Shown: positions 4,082 to 54,272, counted from the stretch's first letter. The stretch: DNA of 64,000 bases from Dimorphilus gyrociliatus (GCA_904063045.1 CAJFCJ010000006.1:2842946-2906945); one strand, 5' to 3'. Notes: generated from the letters alone by a model not told the origin. Made by a program: numbers and translations.

Positions 4082-5248
4082 AGGGTTATTTTATCATTGA
4101 TTTGTTGATTTATAATTTTAATGTGTGAGGATATTAAATAAATATTTGTTCAAGTCGAATAGCAAAAAAAAACTTGTCTGTCTGATAATTTCTATTTATT
4201 TTTCATTTTGAGCGACCCATGATGCAGGCATGTTTAAATGTTGCATATTGGTAGATAAATGATAATAGATTGTATCTGAAACCGTAATGTCTGTCAAAGT
4301 AGCAGGAGCCACATATGTCTAATGCAGCTGTTGTTACCTATTAGCAACACGTGCATCTCTTATGGTTAGAGCAGAGTTTATCGTAATGTATCACAATAGA
4401 ACTATATAAGAAACAAATGCTATATTGAACAATATTTAATATTTTTCACAACATGTCTGTCTACCTACAGAGTTGACTTAAACTTTCTAATTTATTTGCT
4501 TTGTTTATTAAATAAAACTTACCATTTAAAGCTGATATTAATTGTTTCTAATCCTTTATATAGCTGTTTTCAAACAAAAGTTCACGGAGTATTTTTTCAA
4601 CTGATTTATCCTTAATTTTCAATATAAACTACGTTTATTTATTTGTTTTTCAACAAGTGTCTTGTAAATGCTACCTGTTTATTCTCACTGATAAAAGAAT
4701 TCTTGTTACAACAGTTTTATACCTCTTCGTTACATAATAAATAACTTTGATTAGAGATAGTCTAAACAATCTGATTGGTTTTCATTAAGAAAAACAACAA
4801 CTTATGCTACGTTTCCAAAACAACTCAACCTGTTTCTTTTTTTTCAATTAAACGTCTTTTTATGGCCATTTTTCTGTTTTCTTTCAATTATAATTTCTTT
4901 GAATATATTTTCCATACTACATTAGCAATCAATATACATTTTACACTTTTAACCATCAATTAAAATGTAGAATAATACAACTTTAGCCATATTTCTATCG
5001 ATTATGATTTGCATATGTACGACTTTCTTACGTAAAATGGGCTAATAGCAATTAAAAAATATTGGAAAAAAACTTGTATTTCTAAGAAATTTACACATAC
5101 AGATGGCGCTACAGGAGGTTAACTTTTACAAATTGAAAAAAAAAACTTATCTCATTAACAGCCGTTGTATTATTCGTAAATATTTAATGAAATAATCATT
5201 GAAAAATTTTTTTCGGAATCAATAAATTAAAATAAAAGAAGAATAAAA

Positions 5249-5366
5249 GAATACGGCACCCAGTGTTCCCAGGCGGTCTCCCATCCAAGTACTGACTGGG
5301 CCGTACGTCATTTAACTTCGGTGATCGGACGAGAACCGGTGCTTGTAACGTCGTATGGCCGTATAC
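5249..5366 (-). rRNA. 5S rRNA gene, single copy in this window
   Basis: Minus strand reads GTATACGGCCATACGACGTTACAAGCACCGGTTCTCGTCCGATCACCGAAGTTAAATGACGTACGGCCCAGTCAGTACTTGGATGGGAGACCGCCTGGGAACACTGGGTGCCGTATTC then TTTT (Pol III terminator). Internal control region intact; helix II pairing preserved (ACGTTA/TGACGT). Confidence 0.95.
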
Positions 5367-47314: not shown

Positions 47315-50300
47315 TTAAGAAGCTGGTTCAAGCACTTCACAATCATTTTCGCTATCCATGTATTTAAGTTTATTAAGATAGCGTAGGAGGCCCCTTCCTT
47401 TCGATTCAGCAATAGCCCTGTCTTTCTTTTCAATTTCATCACTTTCCAAAATACTTTCAAAGGTGTCTGCTTCATTTTGAAAAGCCTGAGATAGAAAATT
47501 TGAATTCGAGTCAAGACCAATTTTAGAAAAATATCACTTATATTTCTACAGCCTGGCATTCGTAAATTAGCGAGAATAGGATCAATCTAAACTTACGTCT
47601 TCGTCAATGATTGTAAGTTTTTCTTGTTTTTCTTTCTTTGGCCCTCTTAAACTTTTCTTCTTTCTCTCTTCCAACTTTTTGTCTAAGTAACCTGAAAAGT
47701 TATATGCTAATACTTTCATTAATATGAGTGACTAAAGAATTTAATTATTATTAAATTATATACTTCTATTAGTAGTTTCCATTTTATAAATATCACTTCT
47801 ATTCTTTGTCTGAAATATCATGTGGTATATACTCTTCTCATTACAATTAAACATCCGTTTACTGATGTCAACTTTCATATCAGAGTCATTCTGGGGCTCT
47901 CTTTGAGAGTGGCATTCACTGAAGAGTTGTCTTTTTGGAACTGGTTTCTCCTGAGATTTATCCGAGCTATTACTAGATGCAGTGGCTATGTCCTCTTCTG
48001 GTGAATTTTGCGAAACAGAGGTATCTATGTTAATGTTTTTCTGAAACTTAAGATCTTCGTTAGTTGTATTTTCTTCAAGACATTTTACATCTAGGTCATC
48101 ATTGTTGAAGTGATCATCACTAGAAAATTCCTTCATGGACTCACTATTTTTGTTTGACTTGCGCTCATTAGCATCATCTTCATTGAACTTTTGTTCATTA
48201 GAATCATTTTCGTAGGGGTTCTGTTCAATACATTCACTGGAGTCTTCCTCGTTAGAATGACGTTCGCAGGAATATTGTTCATCAGAATCATATTCATCAG
48301 AGTCTTCCTCGTTAGAACCACCTTCACTGAAATTTTGCTCATCAGAGTCATTTTCGTAGGGGTTCTGTTCAATAGAAACACATTCATTGGAGTGTTCGTC
48401 TTTGGAGTCATATTCGTAGGCATTTTGCTCATTGGAATCATATTTATCAGAATCTTCCTCGTTAGAACCACCTTCACTGAAATTTTGCTCATCAGAACCA
48501 TTTTCGTAGGGGTTCTGTTCAATAGAAACACATTCATTGGAGTGTTCGTCTTTGGAGTCATATTCGTAGGCATTTTGCTCATTGGAATCATATTCATTAG
48601 AGTCTTCCTCGTCAGGATCACCTTCGCTAGTATTTTGCTCATTGCAATAATATTTGTCGGAATCTGCGTCGTAAGAAATATGTTCGTCGCTGTTTTCCTC
48701 GATGAAGTTATTTCTAACAAACTTTTCCTCATCACAATCACTTCCATCCACGTCTGTAGTAGAACAACTTGGGAGCCAGTCGTTCTCACAAAAATCGCTC
48801 CCATCCTCGTCTGTAGTGGAACAGCTTGGGAGCCAGTCATCTTTGCCATAATCGCTTCTATCCACATCTAAAGTAGAATGGCTTGAGAGCCAGTCATCAT
48901 CGCCATAATCGGTCTCATCCACGTTCAAAGTAGAATGGGTTGGGAACCAGTCATCCTCGTCATAATCGCTAGATCCATTCCCGTTGATACATTCCTTTTG
49001 ACTTCTATTTTGTCCATCAAACTCATCTTCAGTAGAATTTTCATCAGATTTACTCCTTTCACTTCCTGGGTAATTTTCAGGATAATCATTTGCATTCGAA
49101 CGTTCTCCACTAAAGTTAACCTTTCCGTCTACATCTTCCTTACTTTCAACTTTGCAGAAATCTTCGTCTTCATAGTCACATTCAGCGGGATTCATTTTAC
49201 AGGAATCATAATTGTCAAGGTGATTATCATTGACTGTACCTTCATTAAAATCTCTTTTAAAGGATTCGCCAACAATGAAATCACTTTCCTCAAAGTAATC
49301 CTTTTCAGAGGATTTTTTAACATGATCCAGGGGCTCATCAATGCTACTATCGCTATCATACGCTTTTTCAAATCTTTTATCATTAGTGAAATGATTTCTA
49401 TTTCCGGCTTTACATATTGGTTTATCGAAACTACTATCACTATCATACACTTTTTCAGACGTTTTATCATTACTGAAACGATTTCTATTTGCAGTTTTAA
49501 ATATGGGCTCATCAATACTAAAATCAGTATCATATTCTCTTTCAAATGTTTTACTATTACTGAAATGATTTCTATTTCCAGCTTTAAATATTGGCTCATC
49601 AACACTGAAATCAGTATCATATTCTGCTTCAATAGACTTGTCAATACTGAAGTTACTTTTATAACAATTATTTTTAGGTTCATTAGCAATGGAATCACTA
49701 TCTAACTCTTCATCAATTGAATTACTAACAGTGGAAGCAGTGCTAGAGTCTCTTTCAAAGGATTTTTCAAAAGTGGAGTCTATTCTATTTGATGGACACT
49801 GACTACGATTATATCCATAGTCTTCATCAGAATTGAGAGCAGGTTCCTGATTTAGTATTCTCCCAAAAGATTTTCCTCGTGATGATTCCTCTTGCTCTAG
49901 ATCTTTAGGAAATCTTATAGAATCGTCAATATCTGAAGAAGTTTTATTGTAGCCGCTGTACATTTTACTGGACCCGTCTGAAACTTTAAAATCAGCTTTT
50001 GTCTTGTTTCCCATACTTTTCGCTGATGGTCTCGAAATTGGGGTAGTTTCCCAACCTGTTTCCTCTTCGGATGATTCACTCTCAAAATAAGTATGTGCAG
50101 ACCACTTATCTAAAGTCATTTTCGTCTTGACATTCACAGCTGCAATAGATTGTCAATTATATACATACTAAATGAAACAAGGAAATCTCTAACATTTTCC
50201 ACTAGTGCAACCATCAGATATATAGCGATCTGGACACTCATGTTTAACATGTGCTTCAAACTTATCTTTACTTAAATAATGAGTAGAATTATAGGGGCAG

Positions 50301-50498
50301 ACAGATAAACCATGATTAGGATGTTTCTGAAACGTCGTGAAATTAATAGAAATTAAATTTTAATTGAGATATTACCTTGGCGCATTTACAGATGTGGTAT
50401 TGAAAATAATTTGCCCTAATCTTATGATTTTTATCAAAAGGGCATATTCTATGCGTGCTTTTCTCAATATGTGCAAATTCGTTTGCAAAACTTGTCAT
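47315..50498 (-). CDS. GTSF1/Asterix-like protein: two N-terminal CHHC zinc fingers plus a ~790-aa acidic repetitive exon; 3' exons uncertain
   Basis: Exon 50498-50376 (CPFDKNH...HICKC) and exon 50326-50194 (CPYNSTH...HVKHECPDR) splice in phase to the 2.4-kb exon starting at 50139. Tandem N-terminal CHHC fingers are the GTSF1 architecture. Last exons near 47690-47597 and 47485-47315 are only tentatively phased. Confidence 0.75.
48229..48645 (-). repeat. Coding tandem repeat, 150-bp (50-aa) unit built from 30-bp subunits, ~2.7 copies
   Basis: Near-identical blocks at 48301, 48451 and 48601; peptide unit NEQNxSEGxxxEEDSxEYDSNEQNAYEYDSKDEHSNECVSIEQNPYENxS. Confidence 0.9.
48735..48968 (-). repeat. 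Coding tandem repeat, 57-bp (19-aa) unit with an acidic-Trp core, 4 copies
   Basis: CCAGTC (DW codons on the minus strand) recurs at 48776, 48833, 48890 and 48947. Confidence 0.9.
49335..49640 (-). repeat. Coding tandem repeat, 87-bp (29-aa) unit, ~3.5 copies
   Basis: E.EYDTDFS.DEPIFK..NRN.FSN.KT units; matching GTATCATATTC at 49527 and 49614. Confidence 0.85.
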
Positions 50499-51131
50499 AG
50501 TCTCTTCTGAAATCTATACTGAAAGACATATGCTTATATGAAGGAAATATATCTATATATATCTACTGTATATATAGATATATATATAAGATAAATTTAT
50601 ACATATACTGTATATAATAAAGCACATGTGAAATTCAAGTGGTTGGAATTGATCTTATATAAAGAAAATTGACTTAATTAAGATTACGTTAAGTAGGAAA
50701 AGTCTTTATAAATAATTAAATAATCACATAGTAAGTTTTAGGCGGATAAATAGGTTTCTTTTCAGGACAATTGTGCATTAGGCAATAGTTTAAGAAGTGT
50801 TTGGAAAAGGTATTTCCAAATCAAATTGTTCTTCTTTTTAAAATTCTAATACATAAATATTATAAAACAGCGTAATGGCACAATAAAAATTAAAAGAAAT
50901 CTAAAAAAACATACTTTTCACTGAAGAACAAATTCAAATCTAACAACTTCAAACGTTCTAGAAAGTCACGTTGTGAATAGAAAGCTGTTCCAGACCTTAT
51001 CTTAATATAAGCGGTGTCCAAGATGTTCCGTCAGATAGCGCTAATTTTCGTCTGCTATTCAAAAATTGACTTCAACATATATCATTTATATACTTGGGTT
51101 TAAGAGTTTAATTGCTGACAAAGTTTCGTCA

Positions 51132-54100
51132 ATGTTTAAAATATTTTCTGTCACTCTTCTTTACATCCTTTTCTTGGATTGTCTTTTTGTATTTGCCGAA
51201 GAAAATAATATATTATTAGTTCAAAAGGAAACAGCGAAAGACAAAGGTAGTCTAGAAGACAGAAAAATAAAGTAAGAATACACGAAAACAAACTTATTTA
51301 ATGTGTAAAAGAAATAATTTTTCATTTTAGTAGTGAATGGATGGAAACAGTACATATAGCTGTCGTGGCTTGTGGAGACAGGCAACCAGAGACAACTATC
51401 ATGATTAAATCTGCATTAATCCTAACGAAAGGAAAACTTCATTTCCACATTTTTACTGAACAAGCATTGAGAGAACACTTTAAAAGTGATGTAAATGCTT
51501 TTTTCCATTCTTTAAACTTTATTATTTCAAGAAAGATTTAAAGCACATTTTTAAAGAACAGTACTTAAAACAAATATAAGAACTGAAACCAGTTAATATA
51601 TTATTATCATATTAAGTAAATTTATACAAGAATAGAACATAGGGATACTATTTTATTTGTTATTTATATGTAAAGTATATTCGTATCCTTCTCTAATCAC
51701 TGCGAAATACTGTTGTTCTTGCCGACACAGTCTTTTCAACATATGTTAAAATGTGATTTCTTTTTTTGATAGTTTTTAAAGCTTAATTTTTTATGTGCAT
51801 TTTTATTCTAGTTCGATTCTTTCCCTGCAAGTACTCAAGAGAACTTTCGATATGATTTCTACGATATTCAATACCCAAATGACATTGATATGACCGAATG
51901 GAAGAAAATTTTTAAATTATGCGCCACCCAAAGACTATTTATACCGGTAAATAGGGGTTCTATTTACATTGACTTGTGTAATATTTTATTACATATTTTT
52001 TCTGCTAATTCCTTTTCAGGACCTTATACCTGAATCTGTGACTAATAAACTCTTGTATGTTGATACGGATGTTTTATTCGTTTCGCCTCCTCAGGAAATA
52101 TGGACAATTTTTCATATAATGAACGAGAATCAGGTATAAAAACATTAATACTGTTAATGATGAATTATTAAAAAATATCTTATTAGATATCAGCACTGGC
52201 ACCAGAACACGAAGATCCATCTACAGGATGGTACAATCGATTCGCTCAACATCCTTACTATAAACCTTTAGGTAAATTTTTATTCATTCGATTATTATAA
52301 TTACATAAACAATATAAACGAATAGGTGTAAATTCTGGAGTAATGCTTATGCATTTGGAAAGAATAAGAAATTCAAGTTGGAAGAAGGATATGATTAAAC
52401 ATTATCAGCAGTATAAATATAAAATTACTTGGGGAGATCAGGATTTAATTAATATATACTTTAGTGAGCATCCAGGTAAGATTAATAGCAATAATTTATT
52501 ATTTCCTGTACTATATTGTACTAAAGATAGTTGTAATTTTAGAACAACTTTATATATATACTTGTGAATGGAATTATCGTACGGACCATTGTATGTACAT
52601 GAGTATCTGTAAGGAAGCTGAAAGGTATGGTATTAAGATGCTGCATGGTTGTAGAAAAGCATTTACATCTGATAGTCAACCAGAATTTAGGGTTATATAC
52701 GAAGAATATAAAAAGGTACCTATTAGGTCATAGCTTATTCTAGCTGTTAAATTCTATAATGTTTTATTTGATATGACAGTTCGATATGGATAATGATAAT
52801 GTCCTATCTATACTACCAAATGTTCGAGAAGGTATTGAAAAAGTGCATGATAAAGGAAAATGTAACGTTATAAGTGATCTTATTGAAATTACACTTAAAA
52901 AGGCTTTTGCGGATGAAAAAAGGTACTAGTCGAAAATACTCTCAAGGATAAATGAATTATTAAAAAAAACTTAATTATCCAGACAAATTAGTGATAAATT
53001 AAATGAACATGAAAAAATAAAATATACAAAGGAATCGAACATTGATATTGATTGGGTTTTTAAACATAACACTACAATACACATCGCCGTTGTTGCATGC
53101 GGAGACAGACAAAAAGAAACAGTAGTGATGATGAAATCGGCTGTAATTTTTACAAAAGAGCCGATAGTCTTTCATATATTTGCTGAAAAAGAGCTACACG
53201 AACAATTTATTAACGATGTTCGTAAATTCGTCTATTTTATAAGCTTACTATTAAAAATTTATATTTTTATAGTTTGCTAATTGGCCAAAGAAGACAAAAA
53301 ATCGGATCCGAATGACTCTTTACGATATAGATTACCCTGAAAGTGTCAATGAAAGACAATGGAAAAGTCTGTTTAAGTTGTGTGCGACACAAAGAATATT
53401 TATACCTGTAAAATATCATCACTACTTTACATGCATTTAATAACATTAACATTATTTTTGAATAGTATATCATTTCTCCCGGAGTTACTAATCGAGTACT
53501 GTACGTTGATACCGACGTTCTCTTCTTACGTTCTGTTAAGGATTTATGGGGATTTTTTGATCATTTTAATTCTAGTCAATTATCAGCTTTAGCGCCGGAA
53601 CACGAGGATCGGGCTATGAGCTGGTATAAGAGATTTGCAAGGCATCCGTACTACGGAGAGTTAGGCGTTAATTCTGGTGTAATGTTAATGGATCTAGAGA
53701 GGATGAGAGCCCAAAAATGGAAAGAGAAGATGATTGAGTACTTTAACACATATGAAAAGAACACAACTTGGGGAGATCAGGATTTAATAAATATATATTT
53801 CTCTTTTAGTCCAGGTTTTATTTTTATATGAAATGATTCGTTTTTTCTAAACCGTACTATTCACCATTAGATCAATTGTTTATTTATGACTGCCAATGGA
53901 ATTACAGACCAGATCATTGCATGTATTGGAGCAATTGTAAGGCGGGAGAGGAATATGGAGTTTCTGTTCTTCATGGTAGTCGTAGATTCTTTCATCTGAG
54001 AGAAAAAGAGCCAGCTTTCTGCGAAGTTTATGATGCCATTAATAATGTAACATTTAACTTTAGTCTTGAATTTAATTAATCTATTATTATTCATTTTAAA

Positions 54101-54272
54101 ATTTCAGTATCAGCTGGAAACAGAGTTTAGGACAAATTTATTTGAACCCCTTATTACAAAGTTAAATGCACCTGATATAAAGAATTCAAATTGTGGAAAA
54201 GTTTCGCATTTCTTTTACTACCATTTGGAATATCATTTGATAGCTTTGGAAAAGGAGAATGTAGATTATTAG
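51132..54272 (+). CDS. GXYLT1: Glucoside xylosyltransferase (GT8, GXYLT/Shams-like) with two tandem catalytic domains, most likely one gene
   Basis: Domain 1 (51331-52922) and domain 2 (52983-54272) each contain HIAVVACGDR, FKLCATQR, LYVDTDVLF (DxD), APEHED, GVNSGVMLM, WGDQDLIN, WNYR.DHC and LHG. Only domain 1 has a start Met and signal/anchor. Joined by the 60-nt intron 52923-52982. Confidence 0.88.

What the first reader, a model, noticed from the sequence alone, without database searches (positions are those of the whole stretch)
51132..54272. Double-domain GXYLT: two xylosyltransferase domains fused by a hidden 60-nt intron, with a built-in single-domain switch
Seen: domain 1 ends GAA AAA AG|GTACTAG and, exactly 60 nt later, TTATCCAG|A CAA ATT opens a ~30-aa linker (RQISDKLNEHEKIKYTKESNIDIDWVFKHNTT) running in frame into a second complete GT8 domain. 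Domain 2 has no in-frame Met or signal peptide before its first conserved motif, so it is implausible as a separate gene. If the intron is retained, TAG (52927-52929) ends the protein, and an ATTAAA at 52959-52964 could polyadenylate a one-domain mRNA. Known: GXYLT1/2 and fly Shams have one GT8 domain and add the first xylose to O-glucose on Notch EGF repeats; XXYLT1 adds the second; LARGE is a precedent for a two-domain glycosyltransferase. Inference: a tandem enzyme that may add both xyloses or serve two substrates, switchable by intron retention.
Basis: partly seen in the sequence, partly recalled or inferred. Interest (0 to 1): 0.8.

Follow-up and report, generated by a model that had tools for sequence, protein, structure and literature searches.

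The report
Two-domain xylosyltransferase gene, junction intron retained
A worm gene carries two complete copies of a Notch-sugar enzyme domain in a row behind a single start; public annotation already joins them into one protein, but the only RNA data show the joining intron left in, which gives the ordinary one-domain enzyme.

Summary
The window is Dimorphilus gyrociliatus (annelid). Two complete GXYLT-type GT8 units lie in tandem, separated by a 60-nt GT..AG interval (52923-52982) that keeps the frame.

The "hidden" intron is not new. Public protein DgyrCDS4895 (719 aa) matches the fused model exon for exon.

Contigs of the one RNA run confirm the 11 other introns and show both units transcribed. 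So the retained, one-domain form (368 aa, stop at TAG 52927) is shown. The two-domain form is only inferred.

The inference is still reasonable:
- Unit 2 keeps 56 of 56 family-invariant residues.
- It has 352 open codons in 30% GC DNA.
- It has no start codon and no signal sequence of its own, so it must be spliced onto upstream exons.
- Two other double-GXYLT proteins exist as uninterrupted ORFs.
- They share a rare 2-residue insertion with both worm domains.

Both domains are GXYLT-like and neither is XXYLT-like, so "adds both xyloses" has no support.

The scan has no earlier report of this locus.

Verdict: partly supported, moderate interest.

The parts
50915..51131 (+). 5' untranslated region. 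It is covered by the same RNA contig that also carries the first exon of the minus-strand neighbour gene.
   Evidence: record 1 piece 50915-51271, and joint 50518->50915 with CT..AC ends (a minus-strand intron).
51132..51271 (+). Exon 1: ATG and the only hydrophobic segment (signal anchor, residues 4-22). It ends in phase 2.
   Evidence: joint 51271->51331.
51331..52715 (+). Unit 1 exons 2-7: 51331-51490, 51812-51946, 52020-52133, 52187-52271, 52326-52475, 52543-52715. They encode the first GXYLT-type GT8 catalytic domain.
   Evidence: All six introns appear as GT..AG joints in RNA contigs. Pfam GT8.
52780..52929 (+). Unit 1 last exon. It holds the family's full C-terminal helix. It ends at the donor after 52922 if spliced, or at TAG 52927-52929 if not (...ADEKRY stop).
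52923..52982 (+). 60-nt GT..AG interval between the units. It is spliced out in the public model and retained in the assembled RNA. It carries in-frame TAG (52927) and TAA (52972), and ATTAAA at 52959-52964.
   Evidence: record 1 runs unbroken from 52778 to 53217 and no joint is listed here; site scores are within the range of confirmed introns; the annotation splices it.
52983..53217 (+). Unit 2 first exon. It starts at an acceptor, encodes about 31 hydrophilic linker residues (the former stem), then the first strand and motif of the second GT8 domain. It has no in-frame ATG before the motif.
   Evidence: AlphaFold gives low confidence for residues 366-385, which begin at the junction.
53273..54272 (+). 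Unit 2 exons 53273-53407, 53466-53814, 53871-54046 and 54108-54272 (stop TAG 54270-54272). They encode the second GXYLT-type catalytic domain.
   Evidence: All four introns appear as GT..AG joints in RNA contigs. Pfam GT8 E=3e-13 on the 116-aa exon. It keeps 56 of 56 family-invariant columns.

Best explanation
This is one gene of Dimorphilus gyrociliatus (public model DgyrCDS4895). An old tandem duplication copied everything downstream of exon 1 of a GXYLT-type GT8 xylosyltransferase gene.

Unit 1 (exons 1-8) is a complete type II enzyme with the family's normal C-terminus and its own stop. Unit 2 (five exons) is an equally complete catalytic domain. It begins at a splice acceptor and has neither a start codon nor a hydrophobic segment.

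Shown: the first exon of unit 2 lies on the same RNA contig as spliced unit 1, and the remaining unit 2 exons are assembled at comparable depth.

Inferred: because unit 2 is under strong purifying selection and the enzyme works in the ER/Golgi lumen, it must be spliced onto upstream exons. The most likely route is removal of the 60-nt interval 52923-52982. That gives a 719-aa protein with one signal anchor and two independently folded GXYLT domains joined by a flexible linker of about 25 residues.

Shown: in the one RNA data set available the 60 nt are retained. The assembled, probably major, mRNA therefore stops at TAG 52927 and encodes a full one-domain enzyme of 368 aa. The splice that yields the two-domain form is not yet seen. 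Whether the balance between the two forms is regulated is open.
For: -: 11 GT..AG joints confirm the exon model. The contig that carries spliced unit 1 continues into unit 2's first exon. Depths of unit 2 contigs (196, 140) are comparable with the unit 1 contig (280).
- P0164 (NCBI DgyrCDS4895, 719 aa) contains every exon peptide in order and every split codon, including AG+A=R at the junction.
- unit 2 keeps 56/56 and unit 1 keeps 54/56 of the columns invariant in 26 single-domain animal GXYLTs.
- 352 open codons, p about 2e-13.
- there is one hydrophobic segment only, at the N-terminus, and the same holds for P0001 and P0163.
- P0001 (891 aa) and P0163 (933 aa) are double-GT8 GXYLT proteins, each encoded as one uninterrupted ORF (2676 nt on a 3.3-kb contig; 2802 nt on a 50-kb contig).
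- a 2-residue insertion before the DxD motif occurs in 4 of 263 domains scanned. These are both worm domains and domain 1 of P0001 and P0163.
- donor score 6.9 and acceptor score 2.3 lie inside the range of the 11 confirmed introns (3.0-10.2 and -0.1 to 8.8).
- both domains fold with pLDDT mostly 85-98. The only low-confidence stretches are the stem (27-51) and residues 366-385, which begin at the junction. pTM is 0.54.
- best structural matches are LARGE1, XXYLT1 and LgtC.
- the genome paper reports no spliced leaders or operons in this species.
Against: - No contig of the only RNA run carries the 52922->52983 joint, although a joint with only 29 letters on one side was reported elsewhere in the same table.
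- The retained path is the one the assembler kept, so the spliced form is minor or absent in that sample.
- The public model could rest on ab initio prediction. In that annotation AUGUSTUS had weight 1 and PASA transcripts weight 10, and I could not see its evidence.
- No Logan or NCBI protein of a shorter isoform, and no second copy of the fused one, exists in the protein collection.
- The tree does not resolve whether the worm duplication is the same event as in P0001/P0163.
- A retained-intron mRNA with four downstream introns would be expected to be a target of nonsense-mediated decay, yet it is the abundant form.
Confidence: 0.58

Rival explanations
1. Shared first exon with two alternative catalytic modules. 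Exon 1 (donor after 51271, phase 2) splices either to 51331 (unit 1) or directly to 52983 (unit 2). This would give two ordinary single-domain type II enzymes of 368 and about 398 aa, and no two-domain protein.
For: - Both acceptors are phase 2, so AA+A=Lys keeps the frame.
- This is the state expected right after a duplication that began inside intron 1.
- The product size would match typical GXYLTs of 380-400 aa.
- The fused joint is not seen in RNA.
Against: - No 51271->52983 joint is seen, and the RNA contig is not broken at 51271 or at 52983.
- It would need a 1711-nt intron in a genome whose introns are mostly very short, with a competing donor 60 nt upstream of the acceptor.
- Relatives show that a true two-domain chain is viable.
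Confidence: 0.15
2. Unit 2 is not translated. It rides along as a long spliced 3' UTR of the one-domain mRNA, as a recently silenced duplicate or a purely regulatory tail.
For: The only assembled transcript form stops at TAG 52927, and a second in-frame stop (TAA 52972) precedes unit 2.
Against: - The units are only 56% identical, so the duplication is old. Yet unit 2 has 352 open codons (p about 2e-13), all 56 invariant family residues, a shorter branch than unit 1 (0.84 against 1.39) and four correctly spliced introns.
Confidence: 0.07
3. Two genes in an operon-like or dicistronic unit. Unit 1 mRNA is cut and polyadenylated after the ATTAAA. Unit 2 mRNA gets a 5' end by spliced-leader trans-splicing at 52983, or is translated by internal initiation.
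For: - The acceptor at 52983 has no RNA-confirmed donor, and ATTAAA lies 19 nt upstream of it.
Against: - No in-frame AUG exists before the catalytic core.
- A leader ending in AUG would be out of frame, because the reading from 52983 hits a stop after two codons (from the sequence).
- Unit 2 has no signal sequence, so its product could not reach the lumen.
- The genome paper found no over-represented 5' leaders and concludes that this species has no trans-splicing or operons (PMC7854359).
- The RNA contig runs through the site.
Confidence: 0.04

Closest known systems
GXYLT1 / GXYLT2 (vertebrates) and Shams (Drosophila): UDP-xylose:glucoside alpha-1,3-xylosyltransferases of CAZy family GT8
   Same: Both units sit among animal GXYLT sequences (45-55% identity to named GXYLTs; tree). 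They keep the DxD, NSGVML, WGDQD, CxWNYRxDHC and LHG motifs. There is an N-terminal signal anchor.
   Different: There are two catalytic domains in one gene behind one anchor. The known enzymes have one domain (from my own knowledge and the lengths of named hits). Activity was not tested here.
Public annotation DgyrCDS4895 (P0164, 719 aa) of Dimorphilus gyrociliatus
   Same: It is identical to the fused model, exon for exon.
   Different: The annotation gives only the spliced form. The RNA contigs give only the retained form. I found no paper that discusses the double domain.
P0001 (891 aa) and P0163 (933 aa), unnamed proteins from ENA metagenome assemblies
   Same: They have a signal anchor, a GXYLT domain, a linker and a second GXYLT domain in one chain. 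Domain 1 shares the rare 2-residue insertion with both worm domains.
   Different: They are encoded without any intron. The linker is about 200 residues rather than about 30. Their domain 2 is of the ordinary type without the insertion. The organism is unknown. Common origin with the worm duplication is neither shown nor rejected (AU p 0.13-0.15).
LARGE1 / LARGE2, two-domain glycosyltransferases
   Same: They are type II proteins with two GT-A catalytic domains in tandem, the first a GT8 xylosyltransferase. LARGE1 is the best sequence and fold match among solved structures.
   Different: LARGE pairs GT8 with a different second family (I recall it as GT49) to build a two-sugar repeat. Here both domains are the same GXYLT type, so there is no evident two-step chemistry.
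XXYLT1 (xyloside xylosyltransferase, adds the second xylose)
   Same: It is a GT8 enzyme of the same pathway with a GT-A fold.
   Different: It is only a distant match (E=0.003, 20.8 bits on the 116-aa exon). A true XXYLT1-like domain scores E=1.8e-103 against the same structure. Neither worm domain is of this type.
Bdelloid rotifer GXYLT with a second GT8-like region (P0183 Adineta ricciae, P0002)
   Same: A GXYLT domain is followed by a second GT8-derived region in one predicted protein.
   Different: The second region is degenerate. The DxD motif reads NPN, and similarity is limited to about 35 residues.

Membership tests
Glycosyltransferase family 8 (Pfam PF01501) | A significant match to the family profile above the curated cut-off, for each unit | tested here: met
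   unit 2 exon 50.3 bits and unit 1 exon 24.5 bits, against a cut-off of 24.3. P0164 scores 107.4 bits in two stretches.
Glycosyltransferase family 8 (Pfam PF01501) | GT-A fold with a DxD metal and nucleotide-sugar site | tested here: met
   both domains are modelled at pLDDT mostly 85-98; matches to LARGE1, XXYLT1 and LgtC. YVDTD is present in both units.
GXYLT subfamily (glucoside xylosyltransferase) | Groups with animal GXYLTs rather than other GT8 branches | tested here: met
   the best named hits are all GXYLT1/2-like, at 45-55% identity; both domains lie inside the animal GXYLT set (99/96 against the bacterial outgroup), on long branches.
GXYLT subfamily (glucoside xylosyltransferase) | Residues invariant across single-domain animal GXYLTs are kept | tested here: met
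   unit 2 keeps 56/56. Unit 1 keeps 54/56 (W to F and K to S).
GXYLT subfamily (glucoside xylosyltransferase) | Type II topology: an N-terminal signal anchor that brings the domain into the ER/Golgi lumen | tested here: inconclusive
   one hydrophobic segment at residues 4-22 serves unit 1. Unit 2 has none and depends on a splice that was not seen in RNA.
GXYLT subfamily (glucoside xylosyltransferase) | Transfers xylose from UDP-xylose to O-glucose on EGF repeats | not testable with these tools
   This needs an enzyme assay.
XXYLT1-type xyloside xylosyltransferase | Close sequence similarity to XXYLT1 | tested here: not met
   E=0.003, weaker than the match to LARGE1. Compare, where a real XXYLT1-like domain scores 349.6 bits.
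LARGE-type bifunctional glycosyltransferase | Two catalytic domains of different families with different sugar donors | tested here: not met
   both domains are GT8 of the same GXYLT type and 56% identical to each other.
Spliced-leader operon | The downstream cistron has its own start codon and the species uses spliced leaders | tested here: not met
   there is no in-frame AUG before the core; the genome paper finds no leaders or operons.

The most novel reading that the evidence does not exclude
The gene makes both a canonical one-domain GXYLT (60 nt retained, as seen in RNA) and a two-domain enzyme (60 nt spliced), with the ratio set by regulated retention of a minimal intron. The tandem form acts either as a covalently linked pair or as two domains with diverged acceptor preference. 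The same architecture would have arisen or persisted in at least one other animal lineage (P0001/P0163), marked by a shared 2-residue insertion.
Probability: 0.25. Interest if true: 0.6.

Novelty: new variant of a known kind. Interest (0 to 1): 0.38.

Why it matters
GXYLT adds the first xylose to O-glucose on Notch EGF repeats, and that xylose dampens Notch signalling in flies. All studied GXYLTs have one catalytic domain.

A chain with two intact GXYLT domains, found in a compact annelid genome and in two uninterrupted ORFs from unknown animals, raises two questions. Does this enzyme work as a pair? Has one copy taken on another acceptor?

The locus is also a clean case where a 60-nt intron decides between a one-domain and a two-domain enzyme, and where the public gene model and the available RNA disagree.

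The practical value is modest. It flags a gene model that needs read-level support and offers a simple natural system for testing tandem GT8 function.

Tried and rejected
- **Separate downstream gene.** Rejected: unit 2 has no in-frame ATG before the core and no hydrophobic segment, and only 53 nt separate the stop from the acceptor.
- **Spliced-leader trans-splicing.** Rejected for this species on the genome paper's evidence. A terminal-AUG leader would also be out of frame.
- **Read-through of the retained interval.** Rejected: there are two in-frame stops (TAG, TAA). Both units end at ordinary TAG stops and no in-frame stop interrupts any exon, so the standard code applies.
- **Weak splice sites as the cause of retention.** Not supported: the scores lie within the range of the confirmed introns. 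The matrix was built from only 11 introns, so this is crude.
- **ATTAAA as evidence of a poly(A) site.** No weight: such hexamers occur at about chance frequency here.
- **Shorter or alternative protein isoforms in the 5.8-billion-protein collection.** Nothing closer than 55% identity apart from P0164. This says little, because proteins from this RNA run seem not to be in the collection.
- **Domain tree to date the duplication.** Unresolved. The worm domains are sisters at only 70/30 support, and the alternative groupings are not rejected (AU p 0.13-0.35).
- **Organism behind P0001/P0163.** No DNA could be fetched, and the Atlas search gave only generic GXYLT clusters.
- **Inter-domain packing from AlphaFold.** pTM 0.54, and only three alignment rows cover domain 1, so no conclusion about a pseudo-dimer.
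- **Rfam scan of the window.** Only a 5S rRNA was found.

Full report
**What is in the sequence.** The window is AT-rich (30% GC) and eukaryotic, with very short GT..AG introns.

- On the + strand between 51132 and 54272 lie two tandem units that each encode a glycosyltransferase family 8 domain (Pfam PF01501).
- Unit 1 has eight exons. It starts at ATG 51132 with the only hydrophobic segment of the gene (residues 4-22). It ends ...ADEKRY at TAG 52927-52929.
- Unit 2 has five exons (52983-54272). It ends ...ENVDY at TAG. It has no in-frame ATG before its first conserved motif.

**Identity.** A profile-free search of 1.84 billion representatives with the 116-aa exon of unit 2 gave GXYLT-like proteins throughout.

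- A follow-up word search found P0164, named DgyrCDS4895 [Dimorphilus gyrociliatus] by NCBI and UDP-D-xylose:beta-D-glucoside alpha-1,3-D-xylosyltransferase by UniRef, 719 aa.
- Every exon peptide of the window occurs in P0164 in order. All five split codons give the residue found there, including AG+A=R at the disputed junction.
- So the window is D. gyrociliatus, and the public annotation already contains the fused two-domain model. The intron is not hidden.
Searches before this point were made exon by exon by reference, and afterwards with the public protein P0164 or parts of it.

**RNA evidence.** One public run holds the region. Its contigs are spliced, so it is RNA-derived.

- Eleven GT..AG joints confirm every other intron of both units.
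- The 4677-nt contig that carries spliced unit 1 runs unbroken from 52778 to 53217. That span covers the last exon of unit 1, all 60 nt, and the first exon of unit 2.
- No joint 52922->52983 and no joint 51271->52983 is listed, although a joint with only 29 letters on one side was reported elsewhere in the same table.
- Bin depths over 52815-53136 equal the depth of that single contig, so no other assembled path covers the junction.
- Contigs keep the better-covered path and drop rare variants. The retained form therefore exists and is probably the major one in that sample, while a minor spliced form cannot be excluded.
- Unit 2 contigs have depths (196, 140) comparable with the unit 1 contig (280, a mean that also includes the neighbouring gene). 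Unit 2 is therefore transcribed at a similar level.
- The retained mRNA stops at TAG 52927 and encodes a 368-aa enzyme. This enzyme is complete, because the alignment shows that unit 1 runs through the family's C-terminal helix.

**Why unit 2 must nevertheless be translated.**

- The two units are only 56% identical, so the duplication is old.
- Unit 2 keeps 352 codons open in DNA where about 8% of random codons are stops (p about 2e-13).
- Of 56 columns invariant in 26 single-domain animal GXYLTs, unit 2 keeps all 56 and unit 1 keeps 54.
- Unit 2 also has the shorter branch in the tree (0.84 against 1.39).
- A lumenal glycosyltransferase domain without a start codon or signal sequence can only be made by splicing onto upstream exons.
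- None of the assembled RNA forms can do that. The contigs are therefore blind to whichever isoform is productive, and they cannot by themselves refute the fusion.

**Which splice.** Two donors are frame-compatible with the acceptor at 52983.

- The donor after 52922 gives the fused 719-aa protein. The donor of exon 1 after 51271 would skip unit 1 and give an ordinary enzyme of about 398 aa.
- I favour the first for three reasons. The interval is 60 nt, inside the 53-73 nt range of ten of the eleven confirmed introns in this gene. Its donor and acceptor scores lie inside the range of those eleven introns. And the genome paper reports that this species' splicing machinery is adapted to short introns (PMC7854359).
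- The second route would need a 1711-nt intron with a competing donor 60 nt from the acceptor.
- The annotation pipeline weighted PASA transcripts 10 and AUGUSTUS 1. I could not see which evidence produced this model.

**Relatives.** Two unnamed proteins from ENA metagenome assemblies, P0001 (891 aa) and P0163 (933 aa), are 64% identical to each other.

- Both have the same layout: one N-terminal hydrophobic segment, a GXYLT domain, a lysine- and glutamate-rich linker of about 200 residues, and a second GXYLT domain.
- Each is called as one uninterrupted ORF: 2676 nt on a 3353-nt contig and 2802 nt on a 50-kb contig. A two-domain GXYLT chain therefore exists without any need for splicing.
- A 2-residue insertion between the QRLFIP and YVDTD motifs occurs in 4 of 263 GXYLT domains scanned. 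These are both worm domains and domain 1 of P0001 and P0163. This hints at kinship between these genes.
- The tree is unresolved. The worm domains are sisters at only 70/30 support. Neither a shared duplication (AU p 0.14-0.15) nor a clade of the four insertion-bearing domains (p 0.13) is rejected.

**Structure.** AlphaFold2 on P0164 with 43 aligned sequences gives a mean pLDDT of 85.

- Both domains are modelled confidently.
- The only stretches under 50 are the stem (27-51) and residues 366-385, which begin exactly at the splice junction.
- pTM is 0.54, so the relative placement of the domains is not defined.
- The best structural matches are LARGE1, XXYLT1, LgtC and the UGGT catalytic domain.
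- The linker is thus the former stem region of the second copy, and the protein reads as two beads on a flexible string.

**Function.** Both domains are GXYLT-type.

- XXYLT1 is only a distant match (E=0.003). A genuine XXYLT1-like domain scores E=1.8e-103 against the same structure.
- The idea that the tandem enzyme adds both xyloses therefore has no support from sequence.
- Diverged acceptor preference, or action as a covalent pair, remains possible but untested.
- I found no paper on double-domain GXYLTs.

**Rivals.**

- A separate gene or spliced-leader operon is close to excluded. There is no AUG and no signal sequence, no leaders are reported in this species, and the contig runs through the site.
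- An untranslated unit 2 conflicts with its conservation.
- The shared-first-exon model remains the serious alternative.

**Limits.** Only one RNA run was available, kept as contigs, and one look at it was allowed. Raw reads would settle the matter.

Noticed in passing
proteins P0005, P0009, P0155, P0195, P0202 (not in the window): Bacterial metagenome proteins unite three domains in one chain: a GXYLT-like GT8 domain, a GT90/POGLUT-like domain (PF05686, E about 1e-77 to 1e-80) and an XXYLT1-like GT8 domain. They come from a Gammaproteobacteria MAG (MGK0304876.1, 1050 aa), Thermoanaerobaculia MAGs and others. P0005:680-963 scores E=1.8e-103 against mouse XXYLT1. These are the three enzymes of the animal Xyl-Xyl-Glc-O-EGF pathway. 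From reading the sequences, domain order seems to differ between P0005 and P0009; P0009's N-terminal region got no Pfam hit and was not searched against structures. I found no paper on this.
   Followed up: partly
proteins P0183 (Adineta ricciae, 600 aa) and P0002 (475 aa): Bdelloid rotifer GXYLT models carry a second, degenerate GT8-like region after the catalytic domain. The DxD motif there reads NPN, and similarity is limited to about 35 residues (E=7e-7).
   Followed up: partly
window 50400-51131: The RNA contig that carries the GXYLT transcript continues into the minus-strand neighbour (the GTSF1-like gene with a 793-aa open frame at 47756-50137) through a minus-strand intron at 50519-50914 (CT..AC). 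The two head-to-head genes therefore have overlapping first exons or 5' UTRs around 50915-51131.
   Followed up: no
window 53218-53272: The contig carrying unit 1 ends exactly at 53217. The summed depth in bin 53137-53297 (247) exceeds what the listed spliced contigs explain by my arithmetic. This may mean that the 55-nt intron after unit 2's first exon is also partly retained. The pieces needed to check this were not shown.
   Followed up: no
window 5248-5366 (-): A single 5S rRNA gene (107.6 bits, full length) is the only Rfam match in the window.
   Followed up: no
window 52020-52475 versus 53466-53814: Unit 1 has two introns (52134-52186 and 52272-52325) that unit 2 lacks. The other four intron positions and phases are shared between the units. 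The introns therefore predate the duplication, and unit 2 lost two or unit 1 gained two.
   Followed up: partly
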